A DNA stretch of 63,460 bases, filler included, from Intoshia linei (taxonomy: Eukaryota > Animalia > Orthonectida), in the NCBI GenBank assembly GCA_001642005.1. It is 8 parts of 8 records of this genome, joined end to end, with 100 filler letters (N's around TTAATTAATTAA, not from the genome) between each part and the next. Parts side by side here need not be neighbours in the genome. Positions count along the whole stretch, not along the records: positions 2,713 to 19,750 come from LWCA01000825.1; 7 more parts are not named here. One strand, written 5' to 3'. The notes under the pieces are model-generated. The model made no database searches, was not told the DNA's origin, and worked only from the letters and a program-made list of their open reading frames with translations. Each line of letters opens with the position of its first letter. Position 1 is the stretch's first letter. The position numbers and the translations under genes were made by a program. Of this stretch, positions 2,713-19,750 are shown piece after piece.

Positions 2713-2869
2713 TATTATACATCATATTTGAATATTAATTAATTCTGAGTAACCTTAACATAATTTAAATTTAAATACGAAAATTTAAATATAAATCCAT
2801 TTATATGAGTATTTAATTAATTAGTTAATTAAAATATAATAAGGCTCTAAAATTATTTCTTAGATTGCA

Positions 2870-3115
2870 TATTTTTAAAAATCATTTTGCTCGCTATATA
2901 CAGCTTCAAATAAGGCTTACTGTTATAGAATAATTTTATAGCTCAGAGAAAACGTAAAATATTGTATTTTATTAGTGAGACTTTCAATTGTTCACTTTGA
3001 ATAATCTTTCGAAATAATTTTATGAAATAGTTTGGCTTTTATTTTGTGAAATTTAAGTTTTTATGAAGTGAAAATGTTATGTAAATTTTATTATAAATGC
3101 ATAGTCTCGTAAGGG
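2870..3115. mobile_element. piggyBac-like non-autonomous element end; second copy inverted at about 17901-18148
   Basis: Terminates ...GTCTCGTAAGGG|TTAA. A reverse-complement copy begins TTAA|CCCTTACGAGAC at about 17897. Confidence 0.6.
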
Positions 3116-3601
3116 TTAAAATAATATTTAGAGGTGGCCATTATTCAAAGTCAATTTTTGAAAAATTTCGACGATAAAATTAAGGTCAATCAAAAAATTT
3201 CCAAGTACTTATTATTCTAAATCAAACATTCCAATGTGGTCCAGTGGCCCAGAGCTGTAGAGAGTAAATGTTGGAAGCAAGTCGTATGTAAACTTTAGCC
3301 GTACATAAGTTTTTAGTCATTAATTTTTGTTCTATTAAATTTTTAATCCAACGGTTTCCAAATTTATTTCTTAGTGTAACCCTTTTGTAGTAAAAAAATT
3401 TGACCACATTTCCGAGGTCGATGCGTAGTGTCATCTAGCTCATAGTAATTTATCCAAAAATTTTGACTTAATATTTTAAATTAAACTCGTTATAGTTTTG
3501 ATTAAATTAAATTAAATTTTATGTAAGCTGTTATGAATTGTTAAAAACCAGTTTATAAATTGAATATAAATATATGTAACAAATTTTTTTAAATATTGAG
3601 T

Positions 3602-5614
3602 ATGGACGATTCCGATAATAAAAATAGTGAACCTGAAAATGACCCAAATAGTAGTGCAAATATTGAAAAAATCTCAAAAAATACAATAGATGACATAAAA
3701 GAGGATGTACTATGTGATTTAGTTTGGTTGACTGGTACCGGTACATCCAACCCAATGACATCAATAATTTATGATTTACCTAATTCGTTAAAATCAAAAC
3801 CAAGAAGGAAATATTGTGATATGATTCATTTATGCTTGCTCACAATTTCTAAAAAACAAATAATAAACGATAAAGAAGTTTATGGAGTTTCATTGAGAGA
3901 TATTGTAGATTGGATAAGACAAAATTATAAATTTTTAAATGGTGTTAGTGAAGGTTACGTGATACGTAGTATTCAATATGCATTATCATTATACAGAGAA
4001 GAATATAAATGGGTTCTACACGAAGATTTAGAATTTAATTTAATGTGCGTTTGGGGTATTCAAGAGCAACCTATAGTCAATACACCAGATAAAGAATTGA
4101 AAAGAAGTATAACAAATCAAATTGATCAGTTGGACCTTAAAAAAATGAAGCAAAGTAAAATTTCAGTTCCAGGTATTCCTCCAGAATCTATTATAGATGA
4201 CGTTGCAACTTTTGGTCCAGGTATTGTAGTTTCCGTAACCGCTCACTCGTCAACATTTCTTATGTCAGAACCTAAAAAAAAGATGGCATCACGTATTACT
4301 AATATCGGCAGACCTGCAATATCATATAATACCCTGATTTTAATTTCCATTAGAAGCAAAGGAAGAAAGATTAAAAATAAACATCAAGAAATAATTGGAC
4401 TAACTTTGAATGAAATTATAATGTGGATACGGAACCAGTACCAGTTTTATAAAAAATATGGATACAACAAACTACGAACAGCCGTGAGACACATTTTAAT
4501 AACGACACCATGCTATTACACCTGGAGAATAGATGATAGTGTTGAATTCAATTTGGCACCTATATGGTCAGTGGATAACCGATATCAATTGGCAGTTATT
4601 GCTCCAAAAGAATTGTATACATTTGGTTTAAACGAAAATATGAGCCCTATAGAAATATTGGACAATTACAACGAAAATACAAATATAATAGCATCTCAAC
4701 CATCTCTAACAGCTGAAGAATGTGAATCGTGTAGTTTAGATGAAAGGATACATAAGTTATTAAAGGGGTTAAAAATTATCACAAAAGAAGAAAATGAAGC
4801 GCGTGAAATTGAACCTAAATTTGAAAGACCAAAAATGACTTATGGTGGAATGATTATACTAAGTATATTAATTAGTGGAGAAATGCATCAGCGTAATTTC
4901 AAAAAAATAAGAGCGCTTCAATTGGTGCATATATACACATGGATTAAACTCCAATATCCGTATTATCGGATATACTATGATAAAATGCAAAAGGCTGTTA
5001 GATCTACTTTAACAATTAGCCCATGTTTTTACCATTGGAAATCAGGCACTAAAGGGTCATTATATGCACGGAATGTTTGGTCTGTTGATCCAAGTAAACC
5101 GATTCCTATACTGCGAGACGAAAATTTTATTGGTTTTCAATTGTATGAAATAGAACCGACCATCAAATTGAATGAACCCAGTTTTAGTATACCTCCCGGG
5201 AAAGTTAAAACTGAAAGAATGGACTATTATCCATTGTGCAAAGAAAAACATAGCCCATTTAAAAGAAAACCTTCTGCATTAGACATAATCACAATTCCAA
5301 TTAGATCTAGATCTCAAAAACAATCTCTACGATCTTTGCTCACTTCGAGTTTACGTTCTCGTGTAACTCTTTATAAACATATTCCTCAAACCTTTGATAA
5401 AGCAGTTTTATATGAGAATGAAACTGAGTCGAAAATAAAGTGTGACATTGAAAAATCTGATATTTTCCGATCGGATAAGAATATTAATTCACACAAACCC
5501 TTATCTACTGATGCACCTATCAAACAAAGTAAGTCATATTTAGTAGAACGTGTTACTTTCAGTGACAGTGACAGTATTAATAGTAAAGTGTCTCAAATTA
5601 CTGCGAGTCAATAA
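3602..5614 (+). CDS. Intronless protein with three tandem divergent forkhead (winged-helix) domains
   Basis: 670-codon uninterrupted ORF (first ATG 3602). Three repeats match forkhead KPPYSY..LI..AI..LTL.EIY.WI...FPYY....W.NSIRHNLS...CF....W..DP at nt about 3797-4066, 4310-4579 and 4826-5092. Confidence 0.88.
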   Translation: MDDSDNKNSEPENDPNSSANIEKISKNTIDDIKEDVLCDLVWLTGTGTSNPMTSIIYDLPNSLKSKPRRKYCDMIHLCLLTISKKQIINDKEVYGVSLRDIVDWIRQNYKFLNGVSEGYVIRSIQYALSLYREEYKWVLHEDLEFNLMCVWGIQEQPIVNTPDKELKRSITNQIDQLDLKKMKQSKISVPGIPPESIIDDVATFGPGIVVSVTAHSSTFLMSEPKKKMASRITNIGRPAISYNTLILISIRSKGRKIKNKHQEIIGLTLNEIIMWIRNQYQFYKKYGYNKLRTAVRHILITTPCYYTWRIDDSVEFNLAPIWSVDNRYQLAVIAPKELYTFGLNENMSPIEILDNYNENTNIIASQPSLTAEECESCSLDERIHKLLKGLKIITKEENEAREIEPKFERPKMTYGGMIILSILISGEMHQRNFKKIRALQLVHIYTWIKLQYPYYRIYYDKMQKAVRSTLTISPCFYHWKSGTKGSLYARNVWSVDPSKPIPILRDENFIGFQLYEIEPTIKLNEPSFSIPPGKVKTERMDYYPLCKEKHSPFKRKPSALDIITIPIRSRSQKQSLRSLLTSSLRSRVTLYKHIPQTFDKAVLYENETESKIKCDIEKSDIFRSDKNINSHKPLSTDAPIKQSKSYLVERVTFSDSDSINSKVSQITASQ

Positions 5615-6494
5615 GACGATATTGTTTCTCATTTGAGTAATATTTTTTAACTTAAATATTGTCGGTTTTTGGTAAATATGGATTTTTTTGTTGGTAAAAT
5701 ATTTATTAGCGAATAGTGATGAAATCATATTTCAGTTTTATAATGAAACAAATGAAACCAGGTTGACTGTTATGTACTACGTACAAACAGCACCTAGCTC
5801 TGTTTCACTTTGAATATTTAACTTAAAAATCCTACTATTCACTATTATCACTTTTAAAAGAGTAGTTCCAACTTGTTTCAAGTGGAACCGTCATATCACA
5901 TTACTTTTTAATTTCAAGTGAATTATGCCATCTTATTTTTGTAATTAACATTGGTGTAAAGAATTAAAAAAAAAGGTATCCCATTTAATTAATTTATTAG
6001 ACAGTGTATAATATTAAAAATCAAGTAAAAACAGTCCAATTTAATTCAATTTCAATTCAATATTAATTTAATATGATGAACCATCATTGATGGTATATAT
6101 ACCGCATCTACTTTCGATGAGTAAAAAATATCACAATAAATATAAAAATGATAATAACAAAGTTGTACTTTGTAGTACTTCGTTGTTGTGGTTTTATACA
6201 AAATTTTGTACAAAGTATTTTAGATTTTTTGAAAATATATTTGAGAATCAAAAATTGCATAGCAATGAAAAAAAATCCGAAGGAATCAATTATATAGATT
6301 TCCACCTATATTTATTTATTGGAAATGTGTAGACGTTCAATTATCATTTTTTTTGAAATTGTAGGATGATTATTTACATTTTTAATTTTAATCCAACATT
6401 TGAAAAATATTGGTTGATAATACATTTAAAAATTATTTTTCACAGGGAATGCGTAGATTTCTGGGGTTGAAATTATGTTTTTATATCAAATGGA

Positions 6495-7292
6495 GGGTCT
6501 TTCGTATTTTAGAGACAATAGTTTGAAGATTTTATATAAACTTTATTGAAAAAATAAATACTGTCATAAAACCACAAAATTTAATTATAATTTATTATTT
6601 TTATTGTACTTTTTATAATGAGCATGGATATTTCGAGTTTAGTCTAAACTTTAGATGATTTTAATTTGGAAAATCTTTATATTACAACTAAAAATATTGA
6701 AGCAAGCATAACTTTTTGCTAACAATTCGGTTTTTCTTATTTTAATTGTGAATAGGTCTAATAAGTTCATGTAAGGTATGTCCATTGTGCAACCGGCAGA
6801 TGTTTTTTTCCAAAAAGGTGTGTATAGATGGTTATAAATAGAGATGTTCAGCCCCGTGTAGCAAAGTATTATCGATAAGGAAGGATATATTTTTTTAAAA
6901 AAGTTTTTATTTTAGATTTAAAATCTTATACAGATTGTTTTAATATAATGTAACCATTTAATAAGCGTATTGTAACAATTAAACATTAATTATGTATTTT
7001 TTAATTCATTGATTAATTTTCATTCCTTTTTTTGCACTTTCTTACTATTTGATTAAAAATTAAATTTATCAATATTATTTTTAGTATAAAATACAATTTT
7101 ATAACAATTGGAAATGAATTATCGATAAAATTAGAAAATACGTCAAGTGTAAATTTTTATCTTGTCTATTTGTACACTAAAACAACTTTTGCCATCACTT
7201 ATGTATATTGTTAACAAAAAAAATATATTTTATTTTTTCAATAAAGTTTATATAAAATCTTCAAACTATTGGCTCTAAAATACGAAAGACCC
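6495..7292 (+). mobile_element. Merlin DNA transposon, internally deleted
   Basis: About 65-bp TIRs starting GGGTCTTTCGTA and a perfect 8-bp TSD CAAATGGA. The internal relic reads CPLCNRQM..DGYK*RCSAPCSKVLSIRKDIFF (Merlin/IS1016 N-terminal Zn motif). Confidence 0.8.
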
Positions 7293-7709
7293 CAAATGGA
7301 ATTATTTATATCAGAATAATTTTTTTTTAATTGTAGTAGCGTTAATTTTTTAAAATTTTTTGTTTTAATAAAATATTTGAAAAAAAAATATGAATACTAA
7401 AATGCTGTTTTGACAGTGAAGTCGTCACGTATTCGAATTGAAATTTTTTGTATGTGTTAACAGGATACAAGTTGTATCATACAACTCTACCATCCGTAAT
7501 TTTTTTTAAAATATATGAGCTGTTTTCATTTTAAAGAAAAAATGTAATCTGTGGTTTTGGTTGTGAAAATTATCTTTTGTGATGTTACCAATTATGATAA
7601 TGCTTGTGGTTTTAAAAACTATCCCAGTATTTAATTTTTATAAAATTTTTGGTCATGTTTCATTTTTAAAAAAAATTGTAATTTGATGTTTTTACAATGA
7701 AGATATGCG

Positions 7710-8486
7710 TAGTTATTGTAATTTTCCGGCAAATTTCAAAAGTCGAGAACCGGGAAATTAAAAATTAAATTTCCCGGGAAAAATATAAAATTTTGATTGA
7801 TATATAATATAGAAGCATTAAAAATTTTAGAGACCTTATTTAATTTTAGAAATAAAAAGAAATTTAATTAATGAAATAACACTAATCTAGATTGAAATTT
7901 ACAGATTTAATTAGAAAAAAATTTATTTATTTTAGATTGTTGAAGAAGTGTTTCAAAACACACATAATATTGATAGATTTGTCTTTTAAACGCGTTCTAC
8001 GTTTTGTAACAAAATTAGAAACAGTAGAGAAATTTCTTTCATTTTGTGTTGACGTAAGTTGAACAGTCATAAGGGCTTCTTTTAATTTTAACAATCTTGA
8101 TGATAGCGTTCCAGTTCGTAACAACTCATAATATTTTTCAAAATAATATTGGAAAAAGAGGATAATTCCCTTAAGCGTTAGTAATTTGTGGTTAGAATAA
8201 GAGGTTTTTAAAAAAAGTATTAAAAAAAGGATATTTTACCATTAAGAGCTAAAAAATTAGATTTTTTGGAATAATGAAGTAGATTTTTTTCATAAGATTT
8301 TGTAAAATCGGATTTTTGAAAAGAATATCGGTGTAAGTCAATTTTTCCATGAGGGCTTGAAATGGTATTTTTGAAATGGTATATTTTCATAGTAATAATA
8401 AACATAAATAAAATACAGGTATGTTTAAATTTTTTTCGGGAAATCCCGGAAATTTTGTCCCGGTTTTTTTCCCGACACAATCACTA
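7710..8486 (-). mobile_element. hAT (Ac-like) deletion derivative with dimerisation-domain relic
   Basis: Termini TAGT(T/G)ATTG, 8-bp TSD GATATGCG/GGTATGCG and subterminal CCGGGA repeats. ORF 7927-8124 reads TSTQNERNFSTVSNFVTKRRTRL (hATC motif). Confidence 0.8.
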
Positions 8487-10422
8487 GGTATGCGTTTCTG
8501 AGACTGAGATTTACGAAAATGCTAATCATTTTAAAATGCGTCCCAGAATATATTTGTTTAATTAAATTTTTAGGTTAATTAATTTATTTAATAAAAGTGG
8601 CAATTGGGTTTTTGATGATAAGGGACTCAAATTGGGAAATTGAAAGATAAATATAGACACGCTCAGGAAAAAACTGTATTAGAAATGGGGTTTTTTAAAT
8701 TCTACGACAGTCAATTTTTTCAATAAATGGTAACATACATAGAAATTCAATTTTATGTAAGTAAAGGATATCCGATCATATGGATATTGGAGTTTGATCC
8801 AGGCGTATATATGCTCCAATTGAAGCTCTCTTAACCTTTTGAAATTACACTGACGCATTTCTTCACTAATTAATATACTTACAATTAACCTTTATCCTTA
8901 ATATTAATATTATCATTCCATCAAAGGTATTTTTAGGTCTTTCATGTTCAGCTTTAAGTTCACGAGGTTCGTTTTCATCTTTTGTAATAATATATACTTA
9001 TTCAAATATTATTTAACCAATGTAAGATTTTTTTTGTGCGCCGGCGTAATAATTTTTATTCAAATTTGGTCCGCCAAGGAAATTGAGACTGATGCCCCAG
9101 GTTTAGACTCTAGAGTCTTTATTTCAATAAAAAATTTTTAAAAAGTATATATGGCATATTTATTTATCAATAACATTAAAAATTGCTAATAAATTATTTA
9201 GTTGAAAGAGCCGATACATTGTCACCCAGTTTGAGAGATTACGTTGATGAAACATTACATGATTGAATATTTTACCTTGTATAAAAGAATTTTCGTTCAA
9301 TTCAAACAAATACATTTTTTTTTATTAATATATTTTAGTTATTTTACAAATGCTTCTAGAATCTATACAAAAATTTAAATATTATAAATCTGTTATTATT
9401 TATTGATATTGAGATTTCAGAAAAGTTTTTTTATGCAGTTTCTATGAATTTTCATACTCTTAAGAATCCGTTATACGACTACTCTATTATTTGGAGCTGA
9501 CGTTTGAATTATTGTGGTGATTTTTTCTGATCTTGTTATATACAATTTTGTGATACATTTTAATCTGATATGAAATTTGTCTGGGTTAATTGCGAACCAA
9601 ATTTTTAAATACGATACGTTTCTTCCACGTCTTTATAATGTTGTTTTATGTGTTTTGATCAAATAATTATATATGTTACATCTACAGGGTTTGTACTTTA
9701 TTTTTATTTACAGACGGATTGTATTTTTTAAAAAACAAGAAAATTGTGTTTTTGACCCTGAAGAATTTATTTTCGGAAGATGACTCATTGATAAAAACAG
9801 GACCTACGAAAAACTGTATTAGAAAGTATGTTTTTAAATTCTAGGACTGTTTATTTTATAAATCAATAGTATATAGTAATGGTAAATTGAATATAGCTGC
9901 AAGGTTGTTATTCCGTATTCCATGTTAGGTTTCAATCGGAAAATGAATAAAAGCAAAAAAAAAATCCCGCCTACAATCTTTTTACTAGAATGTCTCGTAT
10001 TCCGTCCTAGTATACAGTAGTCTTTGGCGACAATTAAAAATGATTATTATTTGAAGATTTTATTTTTTCATTCATATAATTTTAAATTTAAGAATATTTA
10101 TATTTCTCGAGAGCAAGCACTAAGTGCATCGGAATTTTTTTATTTATTTTTTAGTGCGCTGTGAACTAAAAATTTTGGAAATTGGGACTTAGACTATACT
10201 ATTTTAATTGGATCTATACTAATCTAATTTTTTTTTGGACTACTCTGATGTTTCATTCAATGTTAAGTTCACTATTATTTTACTATTATTAAGCTATTAT
10301 TAATATTACTGTTTCAGTTTAAGAAAAATTTTGTGTCATTACTAATGATCGTTCTATTTTAGTAAAAGCAATGTAAAAAAACCAATTATACAGAAAATTC
10401 ATTTAATACAATTAATTAATCA

Positions 10423-12539
10423 TTATTGATGTATTAAAGGAGTATTTTCATTTTTCTCTTTTGTTTCATTTGGATTTTTTTCCGTTTTTTTTCTTGTAAA
10501 AATTATTACAAAAAACCATCTAAAATTGAATTTATTAAATGTATATATGACTGTAACTATGATTAATGATGCGAGGATTAATAAAAATTCAACTAATGTT
10601 TCAATATCTGCAAATTATTACCGGTAATGATTTTCGGTTACCGTTAATTTAAAAAAAACCTATTAATTTAGAATAGTTAGTTTTTGATTGACTAATGTTT
10701 CCACATCGGTAAATTTTTACTAGTAATTAATTTTTATCATTTTCCGGTCATTCTAAAACTATTATTTTTCATATACATATATTACATAGTTTTTCAGGTA
10801 CTGAGAGTCTCAGTCTGAAACTGATTCAATATTGTAAATAAACATTTAACCAATTTTTACACTTATAATTGTATCATTTAATGTCGACATAGATAAAGAT
10901 TTAAAACTTTTTGAAGCGGTTTGTAAACGAGGTGAAGGGGAGTTTTCGGGTACTGGATATTTTCTTAAAAAAAGACGATCCAGATGGTCTCCTAATTGCT
11001 TTTGATGCAATATATTTTTTAAGATCCTATTTTGCATCTGAAAGATTGAAAAGATTTGTGATGTTAATTTTTAATTCTGATCTATTGGTGAACATTTTTA
11101 TAGTGTACTAGGTTGTCTGTTATGTACCGTATAAACATCACCTAGCTCTGCCGAGGGCACATTTTTATTCTACCAAAAAAATTTCAGGCGAATTTTACCA
11201 ATATTGAAAAGGATTATAATAAATATAAAAATGATAATAACAAAGTTGCATTACTTTTAGTAATCGTTGTTGTAGTTTTAATTTAAATTTGATACAAAAT
11301 GTTTTGAAAATGAGAATTTGAAATTTAAAAATTGCGAAGGAATCAATTATATAGATTTTCACCCATATTTCTTTATTCGAAATGTGTAGACATTCACTGC
11401 ACATTTTTTTTGAAATTATAGGATCAATATTTACATTTTCAATTTTTATTTTATTCGAGATATTTGGAAAATATTGGTTGATAATATATTCAAAATTATA
11501 ATTTCACCGGGAATTCGTAGATTTCTGGGGTTGAAATTTTGTATTTATATCAACTGGAATAAGCTCTATCAGAATAATTTTTTTTTTAATTTTTGGACCG
11601 TTAATTATTTTACATTTTTTGTTTTAATAAAATATTTCAAAAAAAAAATATGTGAAAACTAAAATGCTTTTTTGACCATGAAGGCGTCACTTATTCAGAT
11701 TGAAATTTTTTGTGTGTGTTAACAGGATACAACTGTACTACCTGTAAATTTTTTGAAATTCTAGGGCTGTTTTCATAAAAAAAGAAGGGTAATTTAATTT
11801 TTTTTTAAATTCTAGAGCTGTTTTTATTAAAAAAAAAAGGGTAATTTTGGGTTTTGGTTCTGAACATATATTTTTTTTAAATTTAAATTTATGATAATGT
11901 TTAATATTTTTAAATCTGTATCAGCGTATATATTTTATTAAATTCTCCAACTTGTTTGATTTTCAAAAAAAGGACAATTGGGGTTTTTGACCAGTAAGAT
12001 GTGAGTTTGGGAGGTTGAAATTTAGTTTGCCAACACCTCCGGAAAAAACTGTAATTGAAATGTGGACTTTATAAAATTCTAAGACGCGTAGTTATTTAAA
12101 TAAAGTTGAACACACACAAACAAAAATTGCGTAGCATATTATATAAGGATAAAAGAATTACTTTAACCAAAATATTACGTTGATATTTTAACTAGGGGTT
12201 GGGACAGTGACTAAAGTTGTTAAATCATTAAATTCATATTTTTCCTACCCATATCCTCGGCAAGGTCTACCTGGAACAATTAATTTTAATTATAAATTAC
12301 ATTATTAAAAACGTTATAAATACGCATACTATAACAATTAGTATAATATGAAACATTGTAAGCTTGACAAAAACTGAGCCTGAACCTGAAAACGATGACG
12401 ATCTACCTAAATATTTAATTTAGAAAATACGACAAAATTTTCATCGTTTGCATATGGAAAATTTAGTGATACCTCTACTCCTCTGAATAGTTACAGAGTA
12501 AAAAGAAATTAGAACAAGCAATACGATCAAAATATTCAT
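10423..12539 (-). CDS. Putative small membrane protein (about 100 aa); exons 12539-12473, 12406-12375, 12270-12249, 10607-10423
   Basis: Phase-compatible GT-AG splicing gives MNILIVLLVLISFYSVTIQRSRGRSSSFSGSGSVDLAEDMDIETLVEFLLILASLIIVTVIY..RKKTEKNPNETKEKNENTPLIHQ*: signal-like N-terminus, TM segment and ExxPLI tail. The exon-2 donor is uncertain and no homologue was recognised. Confidence 0.45.
11108..12149 (-). mobile_element. End-to-end non-autonomous Helitron (about 1.04 kb)
   Basis: On the minus strand: A|TCCTTATATAATATGCTACGCAATTTTTGTTTGTGTGTG...(hairpin)...CAACCTAG|T. It shows 5'-TC, 3'-CTAG, an AT target and no TSD. Confidence 0.82.
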
Positions 12540-12723
12540 TCAATTAGATGTTCCAATTGTGATATTTGAAGTTAAATTTACAGAAATATATCACTGAAAG
12601 ATTGCATGTTTTTATTATAAACTTAGTTATGAAAGAAAACATTGACATTAAAAGTAACTTATATTAAATTTAGATCACACGAAACATAAATTATATACAC
12701 AATTTATATTACAAATGAACAAA

Positions 12724-13839
12724 TTAAATTTTAGTCGTCTGTGAAATACTGATTATATTCAGAGTATTATGTTTAAAAATGAGTTTGTTGACAAAATGAG
12801 AATGTTTAAAAAGATATCTAGACGTAAAACTAAAATTTTGCAGTTTAACTTCAAACAATTTAATTAAATTTCCAGAACTGCACATCATTTTGGTGTTATG
12901 AGTCTCATTTTTAAATAAAGTATAATTGTGATTTTTATCTCTAATTTTAAAAGAAAAATCCATTTTTCCACAAATCTTATTGGTACGTAAATCTTCAATA
13001 ATAACATTTCCATAAATATCAGAGTACATAACATTTTCATTGATAAAATCACACCATACAATGGGTTTATTTTTCTTGTATTCAAAATTGCTGCAGAGTC
13101 TAACCGTATTGGCCGTGCGAATATCCCATAAGCGCAAAGTTGAATCATCGGAAGTAGTAGCTAATAAACTAGTATTTTTTTTAAATTTAACACAATTGAC
13201 AATATCATCATGCGAGGAAAATATTCTGAGACAAGACTCACGATTATAGTCCCAAATAAATGCATTAGTATCCATTCCCCCCGACGCGTACATTTCAGGT
13301 CTCAAATCCAAGCTAAGAATCGGAAATTCACCATGACCAATATAATTTTTCGCTTTTTCACCATTATTTAAACAAATTAAATTAATGGAACCAAAATTGT
13401 TTCCAATTAAAGCATAATTTTGTATAATCTTTGCAACGTGGATAATTTCGTCAAACTTTTTCTTGACGTACACTTTTTTATATTTCTTTTCGCTTGTTTT
13501 ATTGAATGTTTTGTAATAATATCCATACCCGCCAATACATACCAAACTGTTTGTTAAATCCTGGGAAATGTCCATATAAGTATAACAATTTGAAAAATTA
13601 TCTTTACTTTTTGTTAATGATGGATGAACTTCATATGAAATAAAATTATTAATAATGTCTAATTTTGAATGAAATTCCGCCAAATTGGTAAATTCTTTCC
13701 AATTGTTTGATGTTTCACTTATCTGTCTATGGTTTATGTTTTGGCCGTTTTGGAGGTTTTTTATAGTTTCAACTTTTGATTCTATTTTTCGTTTAGTTTT
13801 GTAGCATTTTATATAAGTAGACAAGATATCATTCTCCAT
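12724..13839 (-). CDS. Intronless WD40-repeat protein, divergent TAF5/TAF5L-like
   Basis: 371-aa ORF. YIGHGEFPILSLD..YASGGMDTNAFIWDYNRESCLRIFSSHDDIVNCVKF..LLATTSDDSTLRLWDIRTANTVRL parallels TAF5 YKGHNYPVWD..FVSGGHDRVARLW..PLRIFAGHLADVNCTRF..VATGSADRTVRLWDVLNGNCVRI. Confidence 0.75.
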   Translation of the reverse strand: MENDILSTYIKCYKTKRKIESKVETIKNLQNGQNINHRQISETSNNWKEFTNLAEFHSKLDIINNFISYEVHPSLTKSKDNFSNCYTYMDISQDLTNSLVCIGGYGYYYKTFNKTSEKKYKKVYVKKKFDEIIHVAKIIQNYALIGNNFGSINLICLNNGEKAKNYIGHGEFPILSLDLRPEMYASGGMDTNAFIWDYNRESCLRIFSSHDDIVNCVKFKKNTSLLATTSDDSTLRLWDIRTANTVRLCSNFEYKKNKPIVWCDFINENVMYSDIYGNVIIEDLRTNKICGKMDFSFKIRDKNHNYTLFKNETHNTKMMCSSGNLIKLFEVKLQNFSFTSRYLFKHSHFVNKLIFKHNTLNIISISQTTKI

Positions 13840-15907
13840 CAAACTGATTAGGCAATTTTATTTATATTTGATCATATTACATTTAATTTGAACATTTTTT
13901 GTGTCGTCATGTCATTCGATTTTAAATTGAGAGTCTGAATTTCAGACTAGAGACTGTCAGATGTCTGATACATCATTGATGTATAGTTTTAAAATCAACC
14001 CCTGTATATGCACTTTTGTTCATCTATAAAGCTCTTTTGGAATGGGGAGTAATTAATTTGTCAGTATTTAATTAAAATACTGACATTTTTTAATAAAAAA
14101 TTTTTTGTAATTTCAACATAAAATTGTCAGTATACACCTAGTTTGGATTTTTTGCAGTGGTGGGCAAACTTATCGATATGCGGGCTACATTAAACACGTA
14201 TAATTATGTCGCGGCCGCCCAAATTTCGTGAATACACATGAAACAATTTAAATTGATGAATTTCTATTTTGGTTTGTAAATTTGATTGCTTTTTTTAAAT
14301 ATTAAAGTGTCAAAATTCCATTTGAATAATTAGCAATTATTATTTTTGCAGTGCATTTTAATTATTAATTGTGTTTATTATCAAGTTTCAAAATTGTACG
14401 TATTTATAATTATAGCTATGCAAACAATATAAGAAAATTTGAAAAAAATTAGCCTATTATTGATAAATAATAAAAATAATTTTTTTGTTCAACTATTAAT
14501 AAGACCAACCAAAAAATTTAATTTTTATATCATTAAATTTAGATGAAAAATATTTTAAATATATCATAATTTCGATAATCAATGCGAATTCCAATGGTTA
14601 TTTTTAATTTTTAGATAATGAACGATCGATTAATTAATGTATAGAGGTCCATTTTTAAAATTTTTTTTAGAGTGGCCTACACTTTTTATCGAGCCCGGGC
14701 CTACTGTTGGCTCTCCACGACCATTATTATGACCAAATTAGCTTTAATTCTTAAATTGTTAACACTTCATTTATAATTAATATTTTATTAATTGATTGTT
14801 AATCAGGGGTGCACAGTCATTAAGATCAATATTTGGGGGTGCATACGTCAAAAAAAATTAAGAACCACTTCTTTAAAGGATTGATAATAGTGAATAGTAG
14901 GATTTTTAAGTTAGATGTAAATTTATTTTTTGGTAGTATAAAAATGTTCCCTCGGTAGAACTAGGCTACGGGGATTGATAATAGTGAATAGTAGAATTTT
15001 TAAGTTAGATTTTCAACGTGAATTTTTTGATATAATAAAAATTGCCTTAATCTTAAATCTTAAATCAATATTCGGAAAATTTAACTAATTTATTATATTG
15101 AGCGATAATACATATTTAATCCAATTCAATTTAAAAAAACTCCGGATTTTGCAATAATTTGTATTTTAAAAGTCGTAAAGAATCGGAATCGGAAAAATTT
15201 TAAGAATTTTTATGAATCCGATGCCGATTTCTAAAAAACAACGATTCCAGCGATCTCGATTCCGATTTTTTGGAATCATCGTATCATTAGTTATAAGCTG
15301 ATGTTTTGAGTAAAGATTTTTTTTGTGCGGCACACCAAAAAAATTGAGTCTGACACCCGTGCTCAAGACTCTTGAGTCACATTAAAATTAATGTCTTTAT
15401 TACAGTTTTTGCATATATTTTTCTTGATAAATTCAACTGGTACCAGAATTTCAGTAGAAAAATCAACTAATTGAAAATTGAAACAGTTTTATGAAAAGAT
15501 ATCAATAAAATTACATAATTGTGAGTTATTGGATGCTTGCGTAACATATTCCATCTATGTACCCTTGCATCTATAATGAGCTTACCACAAAATTGTAAAC
15601 ATTGTGGATTCACTATATTTGCTAAATATAATACTATTATAACTATATTATAATAGTATGGTATATATTATATCCTTACTTGTATAATATACAGGATAAA
15701 ACTGTACCATCTGTAAATTTTAAAAAAAAAGACAATTCGATTTTTTGAACCGTAAGATGATAGTTTTGGAGGATGAAATTTATCTTATTATCACCTCGTA
15801 AAAAAATATTATTGAAATGTGGATTATATAAAATTCGAAGACTGGTAGATATTGAAATAAAGTGGAACACACAAATAAATATTGCATAGCATATTATATA
15901 AGTTAGG

Positions 15908-16127
15908 ATGTGGCAAAATATTAGAATATCTCAACTTTATCCAAATATATGGAAACAAATTCTGAACTTAATGATTCCATCTTCATATTTAGTTGAAAAA
16001 GGTTTTAGTGTCGAAAATCAAAGAAAATGGATATTATTAAAAGAGGAGATATTTGTTTATTCCTGTCAAAAATTGAACCCGATATAAAAATATTGGTTAA
16101 CGACCATGAAGCGCAAGTATCACATTA
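15908..16127 (+). mobile_element. hAT Buster-type transposase C-terminal relic
   Basis: IPSSYLVEKGFSV, then (frameshift) MDIIKRGDICLFLSKIEPDIKILVNDHEAQVSH*. Confidence 0.75.
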
Positions 16128-16236
16128 AATTTAATTATCTTATTCGCTAATAATACTTTCATAATACATTTATTTAGTTTTCATTCAGTTTAAAATAAAA
16201 TAAATGTATTTGTTCCTGCATATAATATATATAACG

Positions 16237-18821
16237 TTACACTTTGAAATTAAAATTTTTTTTACTGGGCAATAAAAATAATAAATTATTGTTCATTGTG
16301 TGTAATTTTAATAGTACATTATTGGACCGTGGTGATTTTTCGAATTCAAAGACTTCATTGCTACATTCATAGTTATTAATGACATCTTCTAATTCAGACT
16401 TTATTCTATAGTTATGCCTAAAATACTTTATACTATACAGCATTACACAAATTTTGTAAAAATTTTTACTAATTAGAAGTCAATTCATTACGTTTTGATC
16501 AAATTATTTTAAGGTTGTATGGACTAGAGCAGTGGTCAACAACCTGCGGCCGTGGGTAATCCATGTGATCATAATGCAATATATGATTTTACTTCAAATT
16601 GAAAATTTTAATTCAGATTTTATTCTAGGACTATTCAATTTTATTCAATATTTGTATTAAAAAGTTACATTTTTGATTTGACACTTTCTCAAAATGGTTT
16701 TAAACTTTCTTAGTGGCAAAGTAAATTTTGTGCGGCCGTAGTATTAATAAGTAAAGTAGCTTTGCGGCTGACTTGGTATAAAGGTTGTGCACCCCTGGAG
16801 TACAGGTAATATGTACTATGAACCCCTATTTCAAAATATTTATTTTATGGATACATAGGAAACATGAAATATAAAAAATTTATTAAAATGTTTTTTTAAA
16901 GTTTTTTCTGATAAGATTTATAAAATTGGATTTTTCAAAAAAGTATTGGAAGAAGAGGATATTTCCCTTAAGCGTTGCTAAAATTGAATTTTTACTTTGG
17001 TGTTTTAATAAGAGGTTTTTCTTAAAATATTTGATAAAATCGTTTTTTTCAAAAATATATTGGACTATTAATTATTTCACATTTTTTGTTTTAATAAAAT
17101 ATTTCGAAAAAAAAATATATGAATACTAAAATGCTTTTTTGACCGTGAAGTCGTCACTTATTCAGATTGAAATTTTTTAATATAATAAAATTTGTGTGTG
17201 TGTGTTAACAGGATACAAATGTACCAATTGTAAATTTTTTGAAATTCTAGGGCTGTTTTCATTAAAAAAAGAAGGGTAATTTGTGGTTTTGGCCCTGAAA
17301 ATATAATTTTTTTAAATTTAAATTTTTGATAATGTTTATGATTTTAAAATCTGCATCAGCGAATATATTTTTTAATTCTTCAACTCGTATGATTTTCAAA
17401 AAGATGGACAACTGGGGTTTTTGACCCCTAAGATGTAAAATTGGGAGGTTGAAAATTATCTTATTATGCGGCCCGGAAAAAACTGTAATTGAAATGCGAT
17501 CTTTAAAAAATTCTAAGACTGGTAGTTATTTCAATAAAGCGTAACACACAGACACACACAAACAAAAATTGCGTAGCATATTATATAAGTTAGGTTATCA
17601 CCTTATGAAGGTGCGTTATCAAGTTTTTTAAATGCTGCCCCAAATTTTTTAATTAATTTGTTATTCCTTACACCAATGTACTTGCACCATGTGAATATAG
17701 ATGTAAAATTAATAAATTGTTAAGTAAATCACCTGTATATAAAATAAAGAATAGCCACAATCATAAAAATCAAAATTCCAAATGCCACCATTAGCAAAGT
17801 TGTGTAATTAACCGGCAGTTCGATTGCTTTTAGTTTAATCTCCTTTGTTTTACTCGAGGAGATATTTTTATCTAAAAAATATAACATACCAATGAATTAA
17901 CCCTTACGAGACTATTCATTTTTAGAAATGTTTACACTAATTTTTTTAAAATTTTCACTTGAATAAAACTAAAAATTAAAAAAAAATCCAAACTATTTCA
18001 TAGAATTATTTCGAAAGATTATTCAAAGTGAACAATTAACAAGTGTTACTAATAAAATACAATACTCTACGTTTTCTCTGAGCTATAAAATTATTCTAAA
18101 ACAGTGAGTCTTATTTGATGCTGTATATAGCGAGCAAAATGATTTTTAACTATCATTACATTGGCTGTAAAAGCACAAAAATATTATTAAATAATTGTCT
18201 TGATATTTAAAATAAGGAAGAAATTTTCCAGTTTTTATGATAATAAAATTTTTAGAATTCGGGTTAGAGACTATAACCTTTAAATACTTTGTATGTACTT
18301 TTCAAAATAATACTTCAGTACACTGTGCATTTTGCGATATCACATAAAATGAATTAGGACTTTGATAAAAGATGTTCAATCTGTTGTTGGTGCAACAAAA
18401 TTCCAATTTCATTCCATTCGTTATATATTTACCTCGTGGAACGTTCCCTGGATATATATTATGAGAATATTACCTTTAATTTTAAGATTTAAACCTCGGG
18501 TATTATTCATATACCAATGAATCGAGGTTTGTTCGTTGTCACTTGAACATTTGGATATATTTTTGAACTCACATAATTTGTTGTCCCACTTTTGATTTTA
18601 ATTGCATATTATTACAGAAAGTTAATTATTTATGATATGTTATATTGGATGGTATTTGTTCAGTTTCGTCGATAGTTGTTACAAAATTGTTATTCATTTT
18701 TATTCTACTTTGCTTCGTGCTACATTTTTCATCTTGATTTAATATTCTTGTTCCTCTAATGCTTTCATAATTATACTCTATTTTGTCTAATTTGTATACT
18801 ATTTTTCCATTTACATAATAT
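16237..18821 (-). CDS. ApeC (apextrin C-terminal) domain + TM + cytoplasmic tail gene; intact-versus-pseudogene status unresolved
   Basis: Reads GTRIL..KC..; WDNKLCEFKNISKC..TSIHW..GNVPRGKYITNGMKLEFCC..SFYVISQNAQC..GKFLPYF..IIFLCFY, matching ApeC W..G.YC....C....I.W....G.LP.G.Y......FCC...FYL.....C...PY....YCYY. A phase-1 splice (18160 to 17871) leads to TM LLMVAFGILIFMIVAILYFIY, and a phase-2 splice leads to an open exon at about 16468-16237. Confidence 0.65.
16860..17594 (-). mobile_element. Helitron family 5' portion (further partial copies at about 9690-9860, 15690-15908, 25854-25962, 34540-34710, 42162-42472)
   Basis: Near-identical to 11575-12149, including the (CA)n tract and the GCGTAGCATATTATATAAGTTAGG terminus. 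Confidence 0.75.
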
Positions 18822-18907
18822 TATAGCAGTGATAACTCTCAAATCGATTTTTGACCACTTTTATTGCTACTGTTGCACAACTTTAAAAGTTATGAATTGA
18901 ACATATA

Positions 18908-19750
18908 CACTGCGTTCCAAGTTATTATGCAAACATTAAAAACATTAATAATTTAAAAAATAGTCACTTAATTCTATTAATTTTTTTTAATTATATTTAT
19001 ATATTCAACTAATAATACAATAACGTCCCAAGAAAAATGTAATTTATTCAAAAAAAAAATACACGAAGATTTAAGAAAATTTTGTGATTTTTAAATGCCA
19101 AATTATTATGCAAATGAATATTAAACCATAATTTTAATGTTAATACAAATAAATAAATTTTTTAAAATATTTAAATAATATAATCCATTGTATTTTAAAC
19201 TAAATTGTTTTTGCATCGATTTATTTCAAAATTGCATGCCATATATCGTTTTTTTATTGGTATTGTTTATTCCCACTGTATATCTTTCTTTTAATTATGG
19301 ACCATAGATGCTCAATACAATTAGGATCGTTAACAATAACAATTAATTTGGCGACCAACACATTGTATTTTCTGATCCATAACCATTTGATGAAAGATAT
19401 TCTTTTGTATGATGGAATGTGTGACTTGGGGCATAATCATACATAAAAATTAAATTTTTAAGAAAGCTTTTTCCTCTTTTTTATCCACGAAAAATCGTTA
19501 TTTTTTAAAAACGCTCAGTATGTTTCAGAATTAATTTTGACTTCATCATTTAACTTAAAAGGTCCAATAATAGTGTGTTTCACAATGCCTGCCCAAATCA
19601 TTATACTCCCACCCCCTTGATGCCGTCTTAAACAGTTTTGTGGTGATCTGTTATTCACTAACCAACCCTTAATCCACGAATCTGGCCCATCTAAAGATAT
19701 TCTGGTTTCATCGGTAAAAATTACATTTGAAAAATTTATCTTCATGTAAT
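18908..19750 (-). mobile_element. Tc1-like (TRT/DD37E-type) transposon, 3' half, degenerate
   Basis: FTDETRISLDGPDSW..RRHQGGGSIMIWAGI..GPFKL..KINSETY, then frameshifted D.APSH..W.PN..IEHLWSIIK. The terminus TA|CACTGCGTTCCAAGTTATTATGCAAA has its ATTATTATGCAAA core repeated at about 19102. Confidence 0.82.

What the first reader, a model, noticed from the sequence alone, without database searches (positions are those of the whole stretch)
3602..5614. Single-exon protein with three tandem forkhead domains
Seen: three forkhead-like units start at ORF residues 68 (KPRRKY), 239 (RPAISY) and 411 (RPKMTY), a regular 171-172 aa period. Each has the helix-2 L..I..WI...Y and a terminal W(G/S)(I/V) strand, and units 1 and 2 share EFNL..(V/I)W. 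An S/K/R-rich low-complexity tail follows. Established: Fox transcription factors characteristically have one forkhead domain. Inference: an old internal triplication produced a multivalent winged-helix DNA/chromatin binder, possibly a lineage-specific regulator reading spaced or repeated sites. An intact 670-codon ORF in such stop-rich DNA argues for selection. This is the best candidate for an undescribed system in the window.
Basis: partly seen in the sequence, partly recalled or inferred. Interest (0 to 1): 0.85.

Follow-up and report, generated by a model that had tools for sequence, protein, structure and literature searches.

The report
Orthonectid protein with three forkhead domains
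A transcribed gene of the parasite Intoshia linei encodes one protein with three very divergent forkhead (winged-helix) domains in a row, an architecture I found described in no searched paper; it comes from an orthonectid-only expansion of Fox genes, and its DNA-reading residues are partly lost.

Summary
The core observation holds. The ORF at 3602-5614 (+) carries three forkhead (PF00250) domains at residues 66-155, 237-328 and 409-498, a 171/172-aa period. Pfam, HMMs built from other genes, and AlphaFold2 models all support this. The U1 model's best solved-structure matches are forkhead domains.

"Single-exon" is wrong. Assembled contigs from two studies end exactly at 5528 and continue at 9202. 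So there is a GTAAGT...TTTAG intron at 5529-9201, a 21-codon second exon, and a 663-aa product. This also shows the gene is transcribed.

The genome is Intoshia linei (orthonectid). The three domains belong to a strongly supported clade of 12 I. linei forkhead domains. Their nearest kin are three single-domain paralogues that share a 9-residue insertion after helix 1. None of the 12 appears in the one published Fox survey that covers this species.

No unit keeps the full N-x-x-R-H base-reading triad. U1 is also nearly neutral in charge.

Most likely it is a lineage-specific product of an internal tandem triplication. It probably acts as a multivalent DNA/chromatin binder through U2 and U3, with U1 degenerate. 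That function is inferred, not shown.

Multi-forkhead predicted proteins also exist in two insects, apparently by convergence. Verdict: a new variant of a known kind, of moderate interest.

The parts
3602..5528 (+). Exon 1 coding part: ATG at 3602 with an in-frame TAA at 3590-3592 upstream; 642 codons plus the first base of codon 643.
   Evidence: ORF list and sequence. Contigs from 4 runs cover 3637/3676/3690-5528 without gaps.
3710..3730 (+). N-terminal L-x-x-L-x-W-L type motif (residues 37-43, LCDLVWL). Similar motifs lie upstream of the forkhead domain in paralogue P0003 and in the I. linei genes on L008, L010 and L006.
   Evidence: Sequences. That this motif is typical of FoxJ/N/M-type proteins is from memory, plus the FOXN3 and Ili_J rows shown.
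3797..4066 (+). Forkhead unit 1 (residues 66-155), the most degenerate. The triad reads R..QY and the net charge of the 104-aa domain stretch scored (residues 67-170) is +1.
   Evidence: Pfam 22.9 bits. 30.0 bits against an HMM built from other I. linei genes, and above all 1000 shuffles. AF2 pLDDT 79.4. FOXM1 Z 9.2, rmsd 2.5 A over 79 residues. Foldseek top hits are all forkhead.
4067..4309 (+). Linker 1 (residues 156-236), predicted disordered. Three of the four variant codons that could be read lie here.
   Evidence: pLDDT below 50. Variants D178E, L179I and G207N.
4310..4585 (+). Forkhead unit 2 (residues 237-328). The triad reads T..RH and the net charge of the 103-aa stretch scored (238-340) is +8.
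   Evidence: Pfam 35.0 bits. 51.0 bits against the paralogue HMM. pLDDT 84-94 in the whole-protein model, with no alignment depth on this unit.
4586..4825 (+). Linker 2 (residues 329-408), acidic (net -8 over residues 341-408) and mostly low-confidence.
4826..5095 (+). Forkhead unit 3 (residues 409-498), the closest to canonical. The triad reads K..RS and the net charge of the 103-aa stretch scored (410-512) is +10.
   Evidence: Pfam 37.6 bits. FOXG1 chain E 1.4e-4. 57.2 bits against the paralogue HMM. pLDDT 95-98.
5096..5528 (+). C-terminal tail of exon 1 (residues 499-642), with a short RS-like patch and K/R clusters; predicted disordered.
   Evidence: No Pfam family reaches its cut-off.
5529..9201 (+). 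Intron of 3673 nt (GTAAGT...TTTAG). It holds dispersed repeats. Its first 86 nt are the read-through end of the ORF (5529-5614).
   Evidence: Contigs end at 5528 and their overhang equals 9202 onward. No contig depth over 5529-5712 beyond the 16 exon bases in three of the four runs; a small surplus in X4.
8760..9003 (-). Decayed inverted copy of the part coding residues ~388-460 (end of linker 2 plus the first half of U3), with stops and a frameshift.
   Evidence: Inverted repeat I1, 137 nt, 83% complementary. tblastn 70% and 61% identity in two frames. Genome search.
9202..9266 (+). Coding part of exon 2: completes codon 643 (I), adds 20 codons, then TGA at 9264-9266. The spliced product is 663 aa.

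Best explanation
This is a real, transcribed, two-exon gene of the orthonectid Intoshia linei. It encodes a 663-aa 'beads-on-a-string' protein. Three divergent forkhead (winged-helix) modules are separated by linkers of about 80 residues that are mostly disordered, and a disordered basic tail follows. The modules belong to an I. linei-only clade of 12 forkhead domains. Within it they group with three single-domain paralogues (A3Q56_02973, _02974, _03964), which share two features: a 9-residue insertion after helix 1, predicted to extend strand S1 into a beta-hairpin, and a P-x-K-E-L-x-x-F-x-L-like motif after the wing. The three-domain form most likely arose by tandem duplication of a unit of about 171 aa (domain plus linker) inside one gene, long enough ago that the units are now only 17-20% identical over the whole 171-aa repeat (up to 32% within the domain). 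Inferred function: a nuclear multivalent DNA/chromatin-binding regulator. The basic units U2 (keeps R-H) and U3 (keeps R) would contact DNA with a specificity shifted away from the canonical forkhead site, and would gain affinity and selectivity by binding neighbouring sites together. U1 is neutral and has lost the triad, so it would serve as a structural or protein-contact module. What is shown: the architecture, the predicted folds, transcription and splicing, lineage restriction, and the residue states. What is inferred: DNA binding, multivalency, and the role of U1.
For: - Three PF00250 matches, each covering almost the whole profile.
- HMMs built without this protein score U1, U2 and U3 at 30, 51 and 57 bits. 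U1 exceeds all 1000 shuffles.
- The AF2 model of U1 has pLDDT 79.4. Its best structural matches are forkhead domains: FOXM1 Z 9.2, rmsd 2.5 A, 79 of 80 residues.
- The whole-protein AF2 model gives three modules with the same H-hairpin-H-H-H-E-E pattern at pLDDT 76-98, and mostly low-confidence linkers. U1 and U2 had no alignment depth there.
- Spliced contigs in two studies, 2016 and 2024, carry all three units on one contig. The junction is unique in the genome.
- The organism and paralogues were identified by accession.
- The clade of 12 has 100/99 support, the six insertion-bearing domains 94/79, and U1-3 plus P0003 91/82. Monophyly of U1-3 is not rejected, p-AU 0.44.
- Hydrophobic core residues are invariant while the triad is changed.
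- Net charge is +1, +8 and +10.
- An exhaustive HMMER search of 1.84 billion representatives finds only the three I. linei paralogues and two insect proteins.
Against: - No unit has the complete N-x-x-R-H triad that reads bases in solved Fox-DNA complexes (the triad's role is from memory of those structures). Sequence-specific binding may be weak or lost.
- U1 alone is below Pfam's gathering score.
- The U1 model was made with an alignment of forkhead domains, which favours that fold.
- All five variant positions between the 2016 and 2024 samples that could be read change amino acids, conservatively. That gives no sign of strong constraint; the other five were not listed.
- There is no orthologue from another species, so conservation over time is untested.
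- In the best tree P0003 pairs with U1 (84/47), so the history may be more complex than one triplication.
- The runs are contigs of unstated library type. Transcription rests on the canonical splice junction and on the lack of flank coverage.
Confidence: 0.6

Rival explanations
1. The three modules keep the fold but no longer read DNA. The protein would then be a scaffold, or a competitor or decoy for partners of the single-domain paralogues or of other Fox proteins, rather than a DNA-binding transcription factor.
For: The triad is altered in every unit: R..QY, T..RH and K..RS. U1 has a net charge of +1, against +7 to +12 for the six canonical I. linei domains. A conserved post-wing motif and an N-terminal W-L motif could be protein-contact sites.
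Against: U2 and U3 are as basic as canonical domains (+8, +10). U2 keeps R-H and U3 keeps R. Paralogue P0002, in the same insertion-bearing clade, keeps the full N-S-I-R-H. The tail has K/R clusters of the kind found in nuclear proteins.
Confidence: 0.2
2. It is a sequence-nonspecific chromatin architectural protein, like a linker histone. Several winged helices would bind AT-rich linker DNA or nucleosomes.
For: The U1 model aligns to the histone H5 globular domain almost as well as to Fox domains: Z 8.9, rmsd 2.0 A, 72 residues. Paralogue P0003 has a sub-threshold Linker_histone match, E 0.0015. The base-reading residues are lost, and the genome is very AT-rich.
Against: The protein itself gives no Linker_histone match. 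The genome still has a linker-histone match of 45.7 bits, so nothing needs replacing. Similarity between H5 and forkhead domains is a general property of the fold.
Confidence: 0.12
3. It is an evolutionary leftover: a young or drifting duplicate array that is transcribed but under little selection, on its way to becoming a pseudogene.
For: The domains are extremely divergent. All readable variants change amino acids. A decayed partial copy lies in the intron, so the locus is unstable. No orthologue is known.
Against: There are 642 open codons where about 7.6% of codons are stops. Fold-determining residues are invariant in all three units even though the units share only 17-20% identity. The intron is cleanly spliced, and the contigs are present in two studies.
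Confidence: 0.06
4. It is an artefact: an assembly error or gene-model error joined tandem single-domain genes.
For: Two single-domain paralogues do lie in tandem on another contig. The deposited 670-aa model has the wrong C-terminus.
Against: One uninterrupted frame spans all three units. Independent contig assemblies from the 2016 and 2024 runs each span 3637/3676-5528 in one piece, with 0 and 10 differences and no gaps.
Confidence: 0.02

Closest known systems
Intoshia linei single-forkhead paralogues A3Q56_02973, A3Q56_02974 (tandem on one contig) and A3Q56_03964
   Same: They share the 9-residue insertion between helix 1 and strand S1 and a similar post-wing motif, and they fall in the same 94/79 clade. 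They are the only proteins outside the window with E below 1e-5 in a search of 1.84 billion representatives.
   Different: Each has one forkhead domain, not three. A3Q56_02974 keeps the canonical N-S-I-R-H recognition helix, which none of the three units does.
FOXM1 (human; solved forkhead domain, PDB 3G73 and 7FJ2)
   Same: It is the best structural match of the U1 model (Z 9.2). It is also the best sequence match of L008, a sister gene in the same I. linei clade: 63.7 bits against 44 for the next class. L008 carries an S-L-S-N-I-N-W-L motif upstream of its domain. There is no basic wing-2 stretch.
   Different: Membership of class M is not established. The profile of the six insertion-free clade members prefers FOXM1 by only 3-4 bits, and the profile of the insertion-bearing six prefers FOXG1 and FOXN3. 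FOXM1 has one domain, the full triad and no hairpin insertion.
Canonical Fox transcription factors (Pfam PF00250; classes A-S)
   Same: The helix-strand-helix-helix-strand-wing-strand order is predicted in each unit, and the hydrophobic core and wing tryptophan are conserved.
   Different: There are three domains per chain, a 9-residue insertion, an incomplete base-reading triad, and no RRRKR-type wing 2. The protein is absent from the published I. linei Fox list of 11 genes in 10 families.
Predicted multi-forkhead proteins of insects (Schistocerca nitens XP_049796147.1, 4 domains; Teleopsis dalmanni XP_037951248.1, 2 domains)
   Same: Each has more than one PF00250 domain in one predicted chain.
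   Different: Their domains are near-canonical (329 and 150 bits) and fall outside the I. linei clade. The Schistocerca repeats are young and similar to each other. Both are uncharacterised gene models without transcript checks here. The architecture therefore looks convergent, not a shared family.
FOXP3 multimers on TnG repeats (PMC10719092)
   Same: This is a precedent for several forkhead domains acting together on repeated DNA and bridging it (abstract seen). The resemblance is one of working principle only.
   Different: FOXP3 achieves this by non-covalent multimerisation of a one-domain protein. Here the domains are covalently linked, and DNA binding is untested.
Linker histone H1/H5 globular domain (PF00538)
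   Same: The same winged-helix fold: Z 8.9 to 1HST.
   Different: No sequence-profile match for this protein. A separate linker-histone match exists in the genome.

Membership tests
Forkhead/Fox superfamily (PF00250) | A profile match above Pfam's gathering score (27 bits) | tested here: met
   The whole protein scores 67.2 bits. U2 scores 35.0 and U3 37.6 alone. U1 alone scores 22.9, below the cut-off, but is supported by the paralogue HMM at 30 bits.
Forkhead/Fox superfamily (PF00250) | Winged-helix fold with three helices, a three-stranded sheet and wing 1 | tested here: met
   This rests on predicted models only. U1 has pLDDT 79.4 and Z 8-9.2 to many Fox domains. U2 and U3 have pLDDT 84-98 with the same order of elements. 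No experimental structure exists.
Forkhead/Fox superfamily (PF00250) | Recognition-helix triad N-x-x-R-H that reads the RYAAAYA core (the triad's role is from memory of Fox-DNA structures) | tested here: not met
   U1 reads R..QY, U2 T..RH and U3 K..RS in the alignment with canonical I. linei domains.
Forkhead/Fox superfamily (PF00250) | Sequence-specific DNA binding | not testable with these tools
   Needs EMSA, PBM or SELEX.
Fox class M | The forkhead domain groups with FoxM of other animals to the exclusion of other classes | tested here: inconclusive
   L008 is closest to FOXM1 by 20 bits. The clade profiles are not decisive. No invertebrate FoxM sequences were available for the tree.
Orthonectid-specific insertion-bearing Fox subgroup (defined here) | A 9-residue insertion between helix 1 and S1, and clade membership with the insertion columns removed | tested here: met
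   All three units and P0002-P0004 have the insertion. The clade has 94/79 support with those columns dropped.
Linker histone H1/H5 (PF00538) | A profile match above the gathering score | tested here: not met
   No match for this protein at E up to 10. There is only fold-level similarity.

The most novel reading that the evidence does not exclude
The triple-forkhead protein is an orthonectid invention that works as a covalent array of winged helices, reading composite or regularly spaced sites much as multi-zinc-finger proteins do. One possible reason: in a genome of about 25% G+C, a single AT-rich 7-bp forkhead site carries too little information. The hairpin insertion would then create a new DNA- or nucleosome-contact surface. 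This would be the first functional multi-forkhead DNA reader.
Probability: 0.2. Interest if true: 0.75.

Novelty: new variant of a known kind. Interest (0 to 1): 0.55.

Why it matters
Fox proteins are a textbook example of transcription factors with one DNA-binding domain per chain. Cooperative or bridging behaviour, as in FOXP3 and FOXM1 dimers, is achieved by association between chains. A natural, expressed protein with three covalently linked forkhead modules, each with a new hairpin insertion and re-tooled recognition helices, offers two things. It is a ready-made test of how domain valency and linker length shape winged-helix DNA or chromatin recognition. It also shows that a drastically simplified parasite, with one of the smallest animal genomes, still invents regulators. 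About half of its forkhead loci (12 domains in 10 genes) form a private clade that the published Fox survey of this species does not list. If the function turns out to be a degenerate scaffold, the interest drops to a case study in domain decay.

Tried and rejected
- **Word-indexed homologue searches.** The whole protein and the U3 region returned only the protein itself, so no named relatives could be drawn from them.
- **ESM Atlas look-up.** It gave only generic forkhead clusters with scores below 0.85, and its own model is poor.
- **Literature phrase searches.** Searches for two, three, multiple or tandem forkhead or FKH domains found no paper describing such a protein. The hits concerned pairs of Fox factors, binding sites or FHA domains. 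The orthonectid/dicyemid review says nothing on Fox genes.
- **Replacement of a lost linker histone.** Rejected, because the genome has a linker-histone match.
- **Assignment to Fox class M.** Left open. It is clear only for the sister gene L008.
- **Whole-protein alignment for AF2.** MAFFT placed every homologous domain on U3, so U1 and U2 were modelled without depth. They still folded.
- **Selection test from the 2016 versus 2024 variants.** Only 5 of 10 differences were listed, which is too few.
- **Bacterial-type promoter/terminator scan after exon 2.** Uninformative for a eukaryote.
- **Joined (spliced) protein.** Exon 1 was used by reference and exon 2 was only translated in a script.
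- **Forkhead loci split by introns** (L012, L015, L017, L018). These were left out of the tree.
Full report
**What is there**

The piece (window 2713-19750) is contig C2344 of a 41.6-Mb genome in 3520 contigs, with 23-33% G+C. The + strand has one long open frame, 3596/3602-5614. An in-frame TAA at 3590-3592 lies just before the ATG at 3602. About 7.6% of codons in each frame of the piece are stops, so 670 open codons cannot be chance.

The genome is Intoshia linei, an orthonectid. The three nearest paralogues elsewhere in the same assembly carry the accessions OAF69298.1, OAF69299.1 and OAF68283.1 (A3Q56_02973, _02974, _03964), which are labelled with that species. The protein itself is already deposited as a 670-aa predicted protein in NCBI and UniRef; no accession or name is shown.

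**Three forkhead domains**

Profile evidence:
- Pfam PF00250 matches the protein at 67.2 bits in three stretches.
- Scanned separately, residues 60-175, 230-345 and 400-510 give 22.9, 35.0 and 37.6 bits. Each covers profile positions 2 to 81-83 of 88.
- The linkers and the tail match nothing.

U1 alone is below the 27-bit gathering score, so I tested it further:
- An HMM built only from other I. linei genes of the same clade (none from this protein) scores U1, U2 and U3 at 30.0, 51.0 and 57.2 bits.
- Against an HMM of canonical domains, U1 scores 14.3 bits, while the best of 1000 shuffles scores 8.1.

Structure predictions:
- An AlphaFold2 model of U1, made with an 18-row alignment, has mean pLDDT 79.4 and the element order helix, hairpin, helix, helix, strand, strand.
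- Foldseek's first 30 or so matches to that model are all forkhead domains, at probability about 1.0 but E about 0.02.
- VIA-align gives Z 9.2, rmsd 2.5 A and 79 of 80 residues for FOXM1, and Z 8-9 for many other Fox domains. Histone H5 scores Z 8.9.
- A whole-protein model of exon 1 gives three folded modules: about residues 70-132 (pLDDT 76-88), 240-325 (84-94) and 410-510 (95-98). All show the same secondary-structure pattern. The termini and most of both linkers are below 50.
- In that run MAFFT had aligned every homologue to U3. U1 and U2 therefore folded without alignment depth, which makes them partly independent support.

The units begin at K66, R237 and R409, a period of 171 and 172 residues.

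**Gene structure and expression**

Contigs assembled from six public runs in two studies (2016 and 2024) hold the stretch. I laid four of them on the window:
- Each has one contig (two overlapping contigs in X6) running from 3637, 3676 or 3690 to exactly 5528, with 0 or about 10 differences and no gaps.
- In three of the four runs the depth over 5513-5712 is just what the 16 exon bases give, so nothing of note covers 5529-5712; run X4 shows a small surplus (16.5 against about 13).
- One run from each study (X1 and X6) shows the same overhang after 5528.

That overhang matches the window once, at 9202, and the whole genome once, at the same place. Position 5529 starts GTAAGT, and 9202 is preceded by TTTAG.

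So the gene has a 3673-nt intron. The last 28 codons of the ORF are intron read-through. Exon 2 completes codon 643 and adds 20 codons and a TGA at 9264-9266, which gives 663 aa. "Single-exon" is therefore wrong, and the deposited 670-aa model has the wrong C-terminus.

The canonical splice junction also shows that these runs contain cDNA, so the gene is transcribed. All three domains sit on one transcript contig in both studies. In run X1 the depth in 3513-3712 needs further contigs upstream of 3637, and there is none in 3313-3512. This fits a short 5' UTR and the ATG at 3602 (my arithmetic). Contigs cannot give expression level or life stage.

**Relatives**

- An exhaustive HMMER search of 1.84 billion cluster representatives gave six hits. 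They are the protein itself, three I. linei paralogues with one forkhead domain each, and two insect predicted proteins with four domains (Schistocerca nitens) and two domains (Teleopsis dalmanni).
- The word-indexed searches found only the protein itself.
- In the genome there are about 20 forkhead loci. No second multi-domain ORF was found.

I aligned 12 complete I. linei domains, the three units, the three paralogues and the insect domains. Two groups stand out:
- L007-L010, L013 and L014 share a distinctive sequence pattern and a post-wing P-x-E-Y-L-x-x-F motif.
- U1-3 and P0002-4 have, in addition, a 9-residue insertion between helix 1 and strand S1.

With the insertion columns removed, the maximum-likelihood tree gives these supports:

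| Group | Support (ultrafast bootstrap / SH-aLRT) |
|---|---|
| All 12 divergent I. linei domains | 100/99 |
| The six insertion-bearing domains | 94/79 |
| U1, U2, U3 plus P0003 | 91/82 |

The insect domains lie outside these groups. Holding U1-3 together as one clade costs 1.6 log-likelihood units, p-AU 0.44, so a single internal triplication is compatible but not proven. Profile-profile comparison of the two subgroups gives 99.5% probability.

The regular period points to duplication of one unit of about 171 aa inside a gene, rather than fusion of separate genes. So do the low identity between units (17-20%) and the absence of DNA repeats between them. The linkers themselves are no longer alignable.

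The one Fox survey that includes I. linei lists 11 genes in 10 families. Its supplementary tables contain none of the 12 divergent domains. No paper in the searched library describes a protein with several forkhead domains.

**Which Fox class**

- The sister gene on L008 matches FOXM1 best by 20 bits. It has an S-L-S-N-I-N-W-L motif upstream of its domain, and the window protein has L-C-D-L-V-W-L at residues 37-43.
- FOXM1 is also the top structural match of U1.
- The clade profiles do not separate FOXM1 from FOXK, FOXA, FOXG or FOXN.

A FoxM origin is therefore a lead, not a result.

**How it may work**

In the alignment, the canonical N-S-I-R-H of the recognition helix reads as follows:

| Domain | Residues at the canonical N-S-I-R-H positions |
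|---|---|
| U1 | R-S-I-Q-Y |
| U2 | T-A-V-R-H |
| U3 | K-A-V-R-S |
| Paralogue P0002 | N-S-I-R-H (fully kept) |

Fold-determining residues are invariant across the units: the Y after the first P, I, L, I, W, I, Y, the L of helix 3, and the wing W. Net charge of the domains is +1 (U1), +8 (U2) and +10 (U3). The six canonical I. linei domains have +7 to +12.

The simplest reading has three parts:
- The fold is under selection in all three units.
- U2 and U3 still contact DNA, with changed specificity.
- U1 has become a structural or protein-contact module.

Flexible linkers would let the domains bind neighbouring sites together. All of this is inference.

Three rivals remain open:
- a non-DNA-binding scaffold;
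- a nonspecific chromatin architectural protein (the genome still has a linker-histone match);
- a drifting duplicate array.

The last rival draws on two observations. The five readable differences between the 2016 and 2024 samples change four codons, all conservatively: V138I, D178E, L179I and G207N. A decayed inverted copy of the start of U3 also lies in the intron. An assembly or gene-model artefact is excluded by the continuous frame and the transcript contigs.

**Verdict**

This is a new variant of a known kind: a lineage-specific Fox protein with three covalently linked, re-tooled forkhead domains. It is deposited but not described in any paper I could search. Interest is moderate and depends on whether the array binds DNA.

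Noticed in passing
window 8760-9003 (-): A decayed, inverted partial copy of the gene's own coding sequence (residues ~388-460: end of linker 2 plus the first half of forkhead unit 3) lies inside the gene's intron. It is 83% identical over 137 nt and carries stops and a frameshift.
   Followed up: yes
G000 contigs C2410, C1216, C1795, C1737, C1612, C3286, C641, C522 (loci L007-L011, L013, L014, L016): Ten I. linei genes, holding 12 forkhead domains, form a strongly supported private clade (100/99). It is absent from the supplementary tables of the published Fox survey, which lists 11 I. linei Fox genes. The gene on L008 looks FoxM-like.
   Followed up: partly
L011:2788-4365 and L011:7423-9405 (G000 contig C641): Two single-forkhead paralogues with the same 9-residue insertion lie in tandem on the same strand about 3 kb apart (A3Q56_02973 and _02974). 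The deposited 580-aa model of the second removes part of the 660-aa open frame.
   Followed up: partly
P0005 (Schistocerca nitens XP_049796147.1) and P0006 (Teleopsis dalmanni XP_037951248.1): Uncharacterised insect predicted proteins with four and two near-canonical forkhead domains. The grasshopper repeats, linkers included, look recently duplicated. I did not check them against transcripts.
   Followed up: partly
window 7331-7639, 11593-12122, 17060-17556; also 6270-6494 and 11327-11558: Several families of dispersed direct repeats (60-93% identity) fill the intron and the intergenic DNA. They show very high contig depth in all runs, so they are probably a high-copy interspersed element of this genome.
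   Followed up: no
window 2875-3045 and 17978-18149: A pair of inverted repeats (109 and 60 nt, 93-95% complementary) about 15 kb apart brackets the forkhead gene and its neighbours.
   Followed up: no
window 12724-13842 (-): A 372-aa ORF with WD40 repeats. The WD40 family scores 49.4 bits; THOC3-, WDR3- and WDR55-type propeller models match below their own cut-offs. It is a neighbouring gene on the opposite strand.
   Followed up: partly
window 19515-19745 (-): A 76-aa ORF cut by the edge of the piece. By eye it resembles the catalytic region of a Tc1/mariner-type transposase, but it has no Pfam match at E 0.01, so this is only a lead from memory.
   Followed up: partly
G000:C398:4567-4824 (+): The only linker-histone (PF00538) match in the genome, 45.7 bits, has two stop codons inside the matched stretch. 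These may mark an intron or a broken gene.
   Followed up: no
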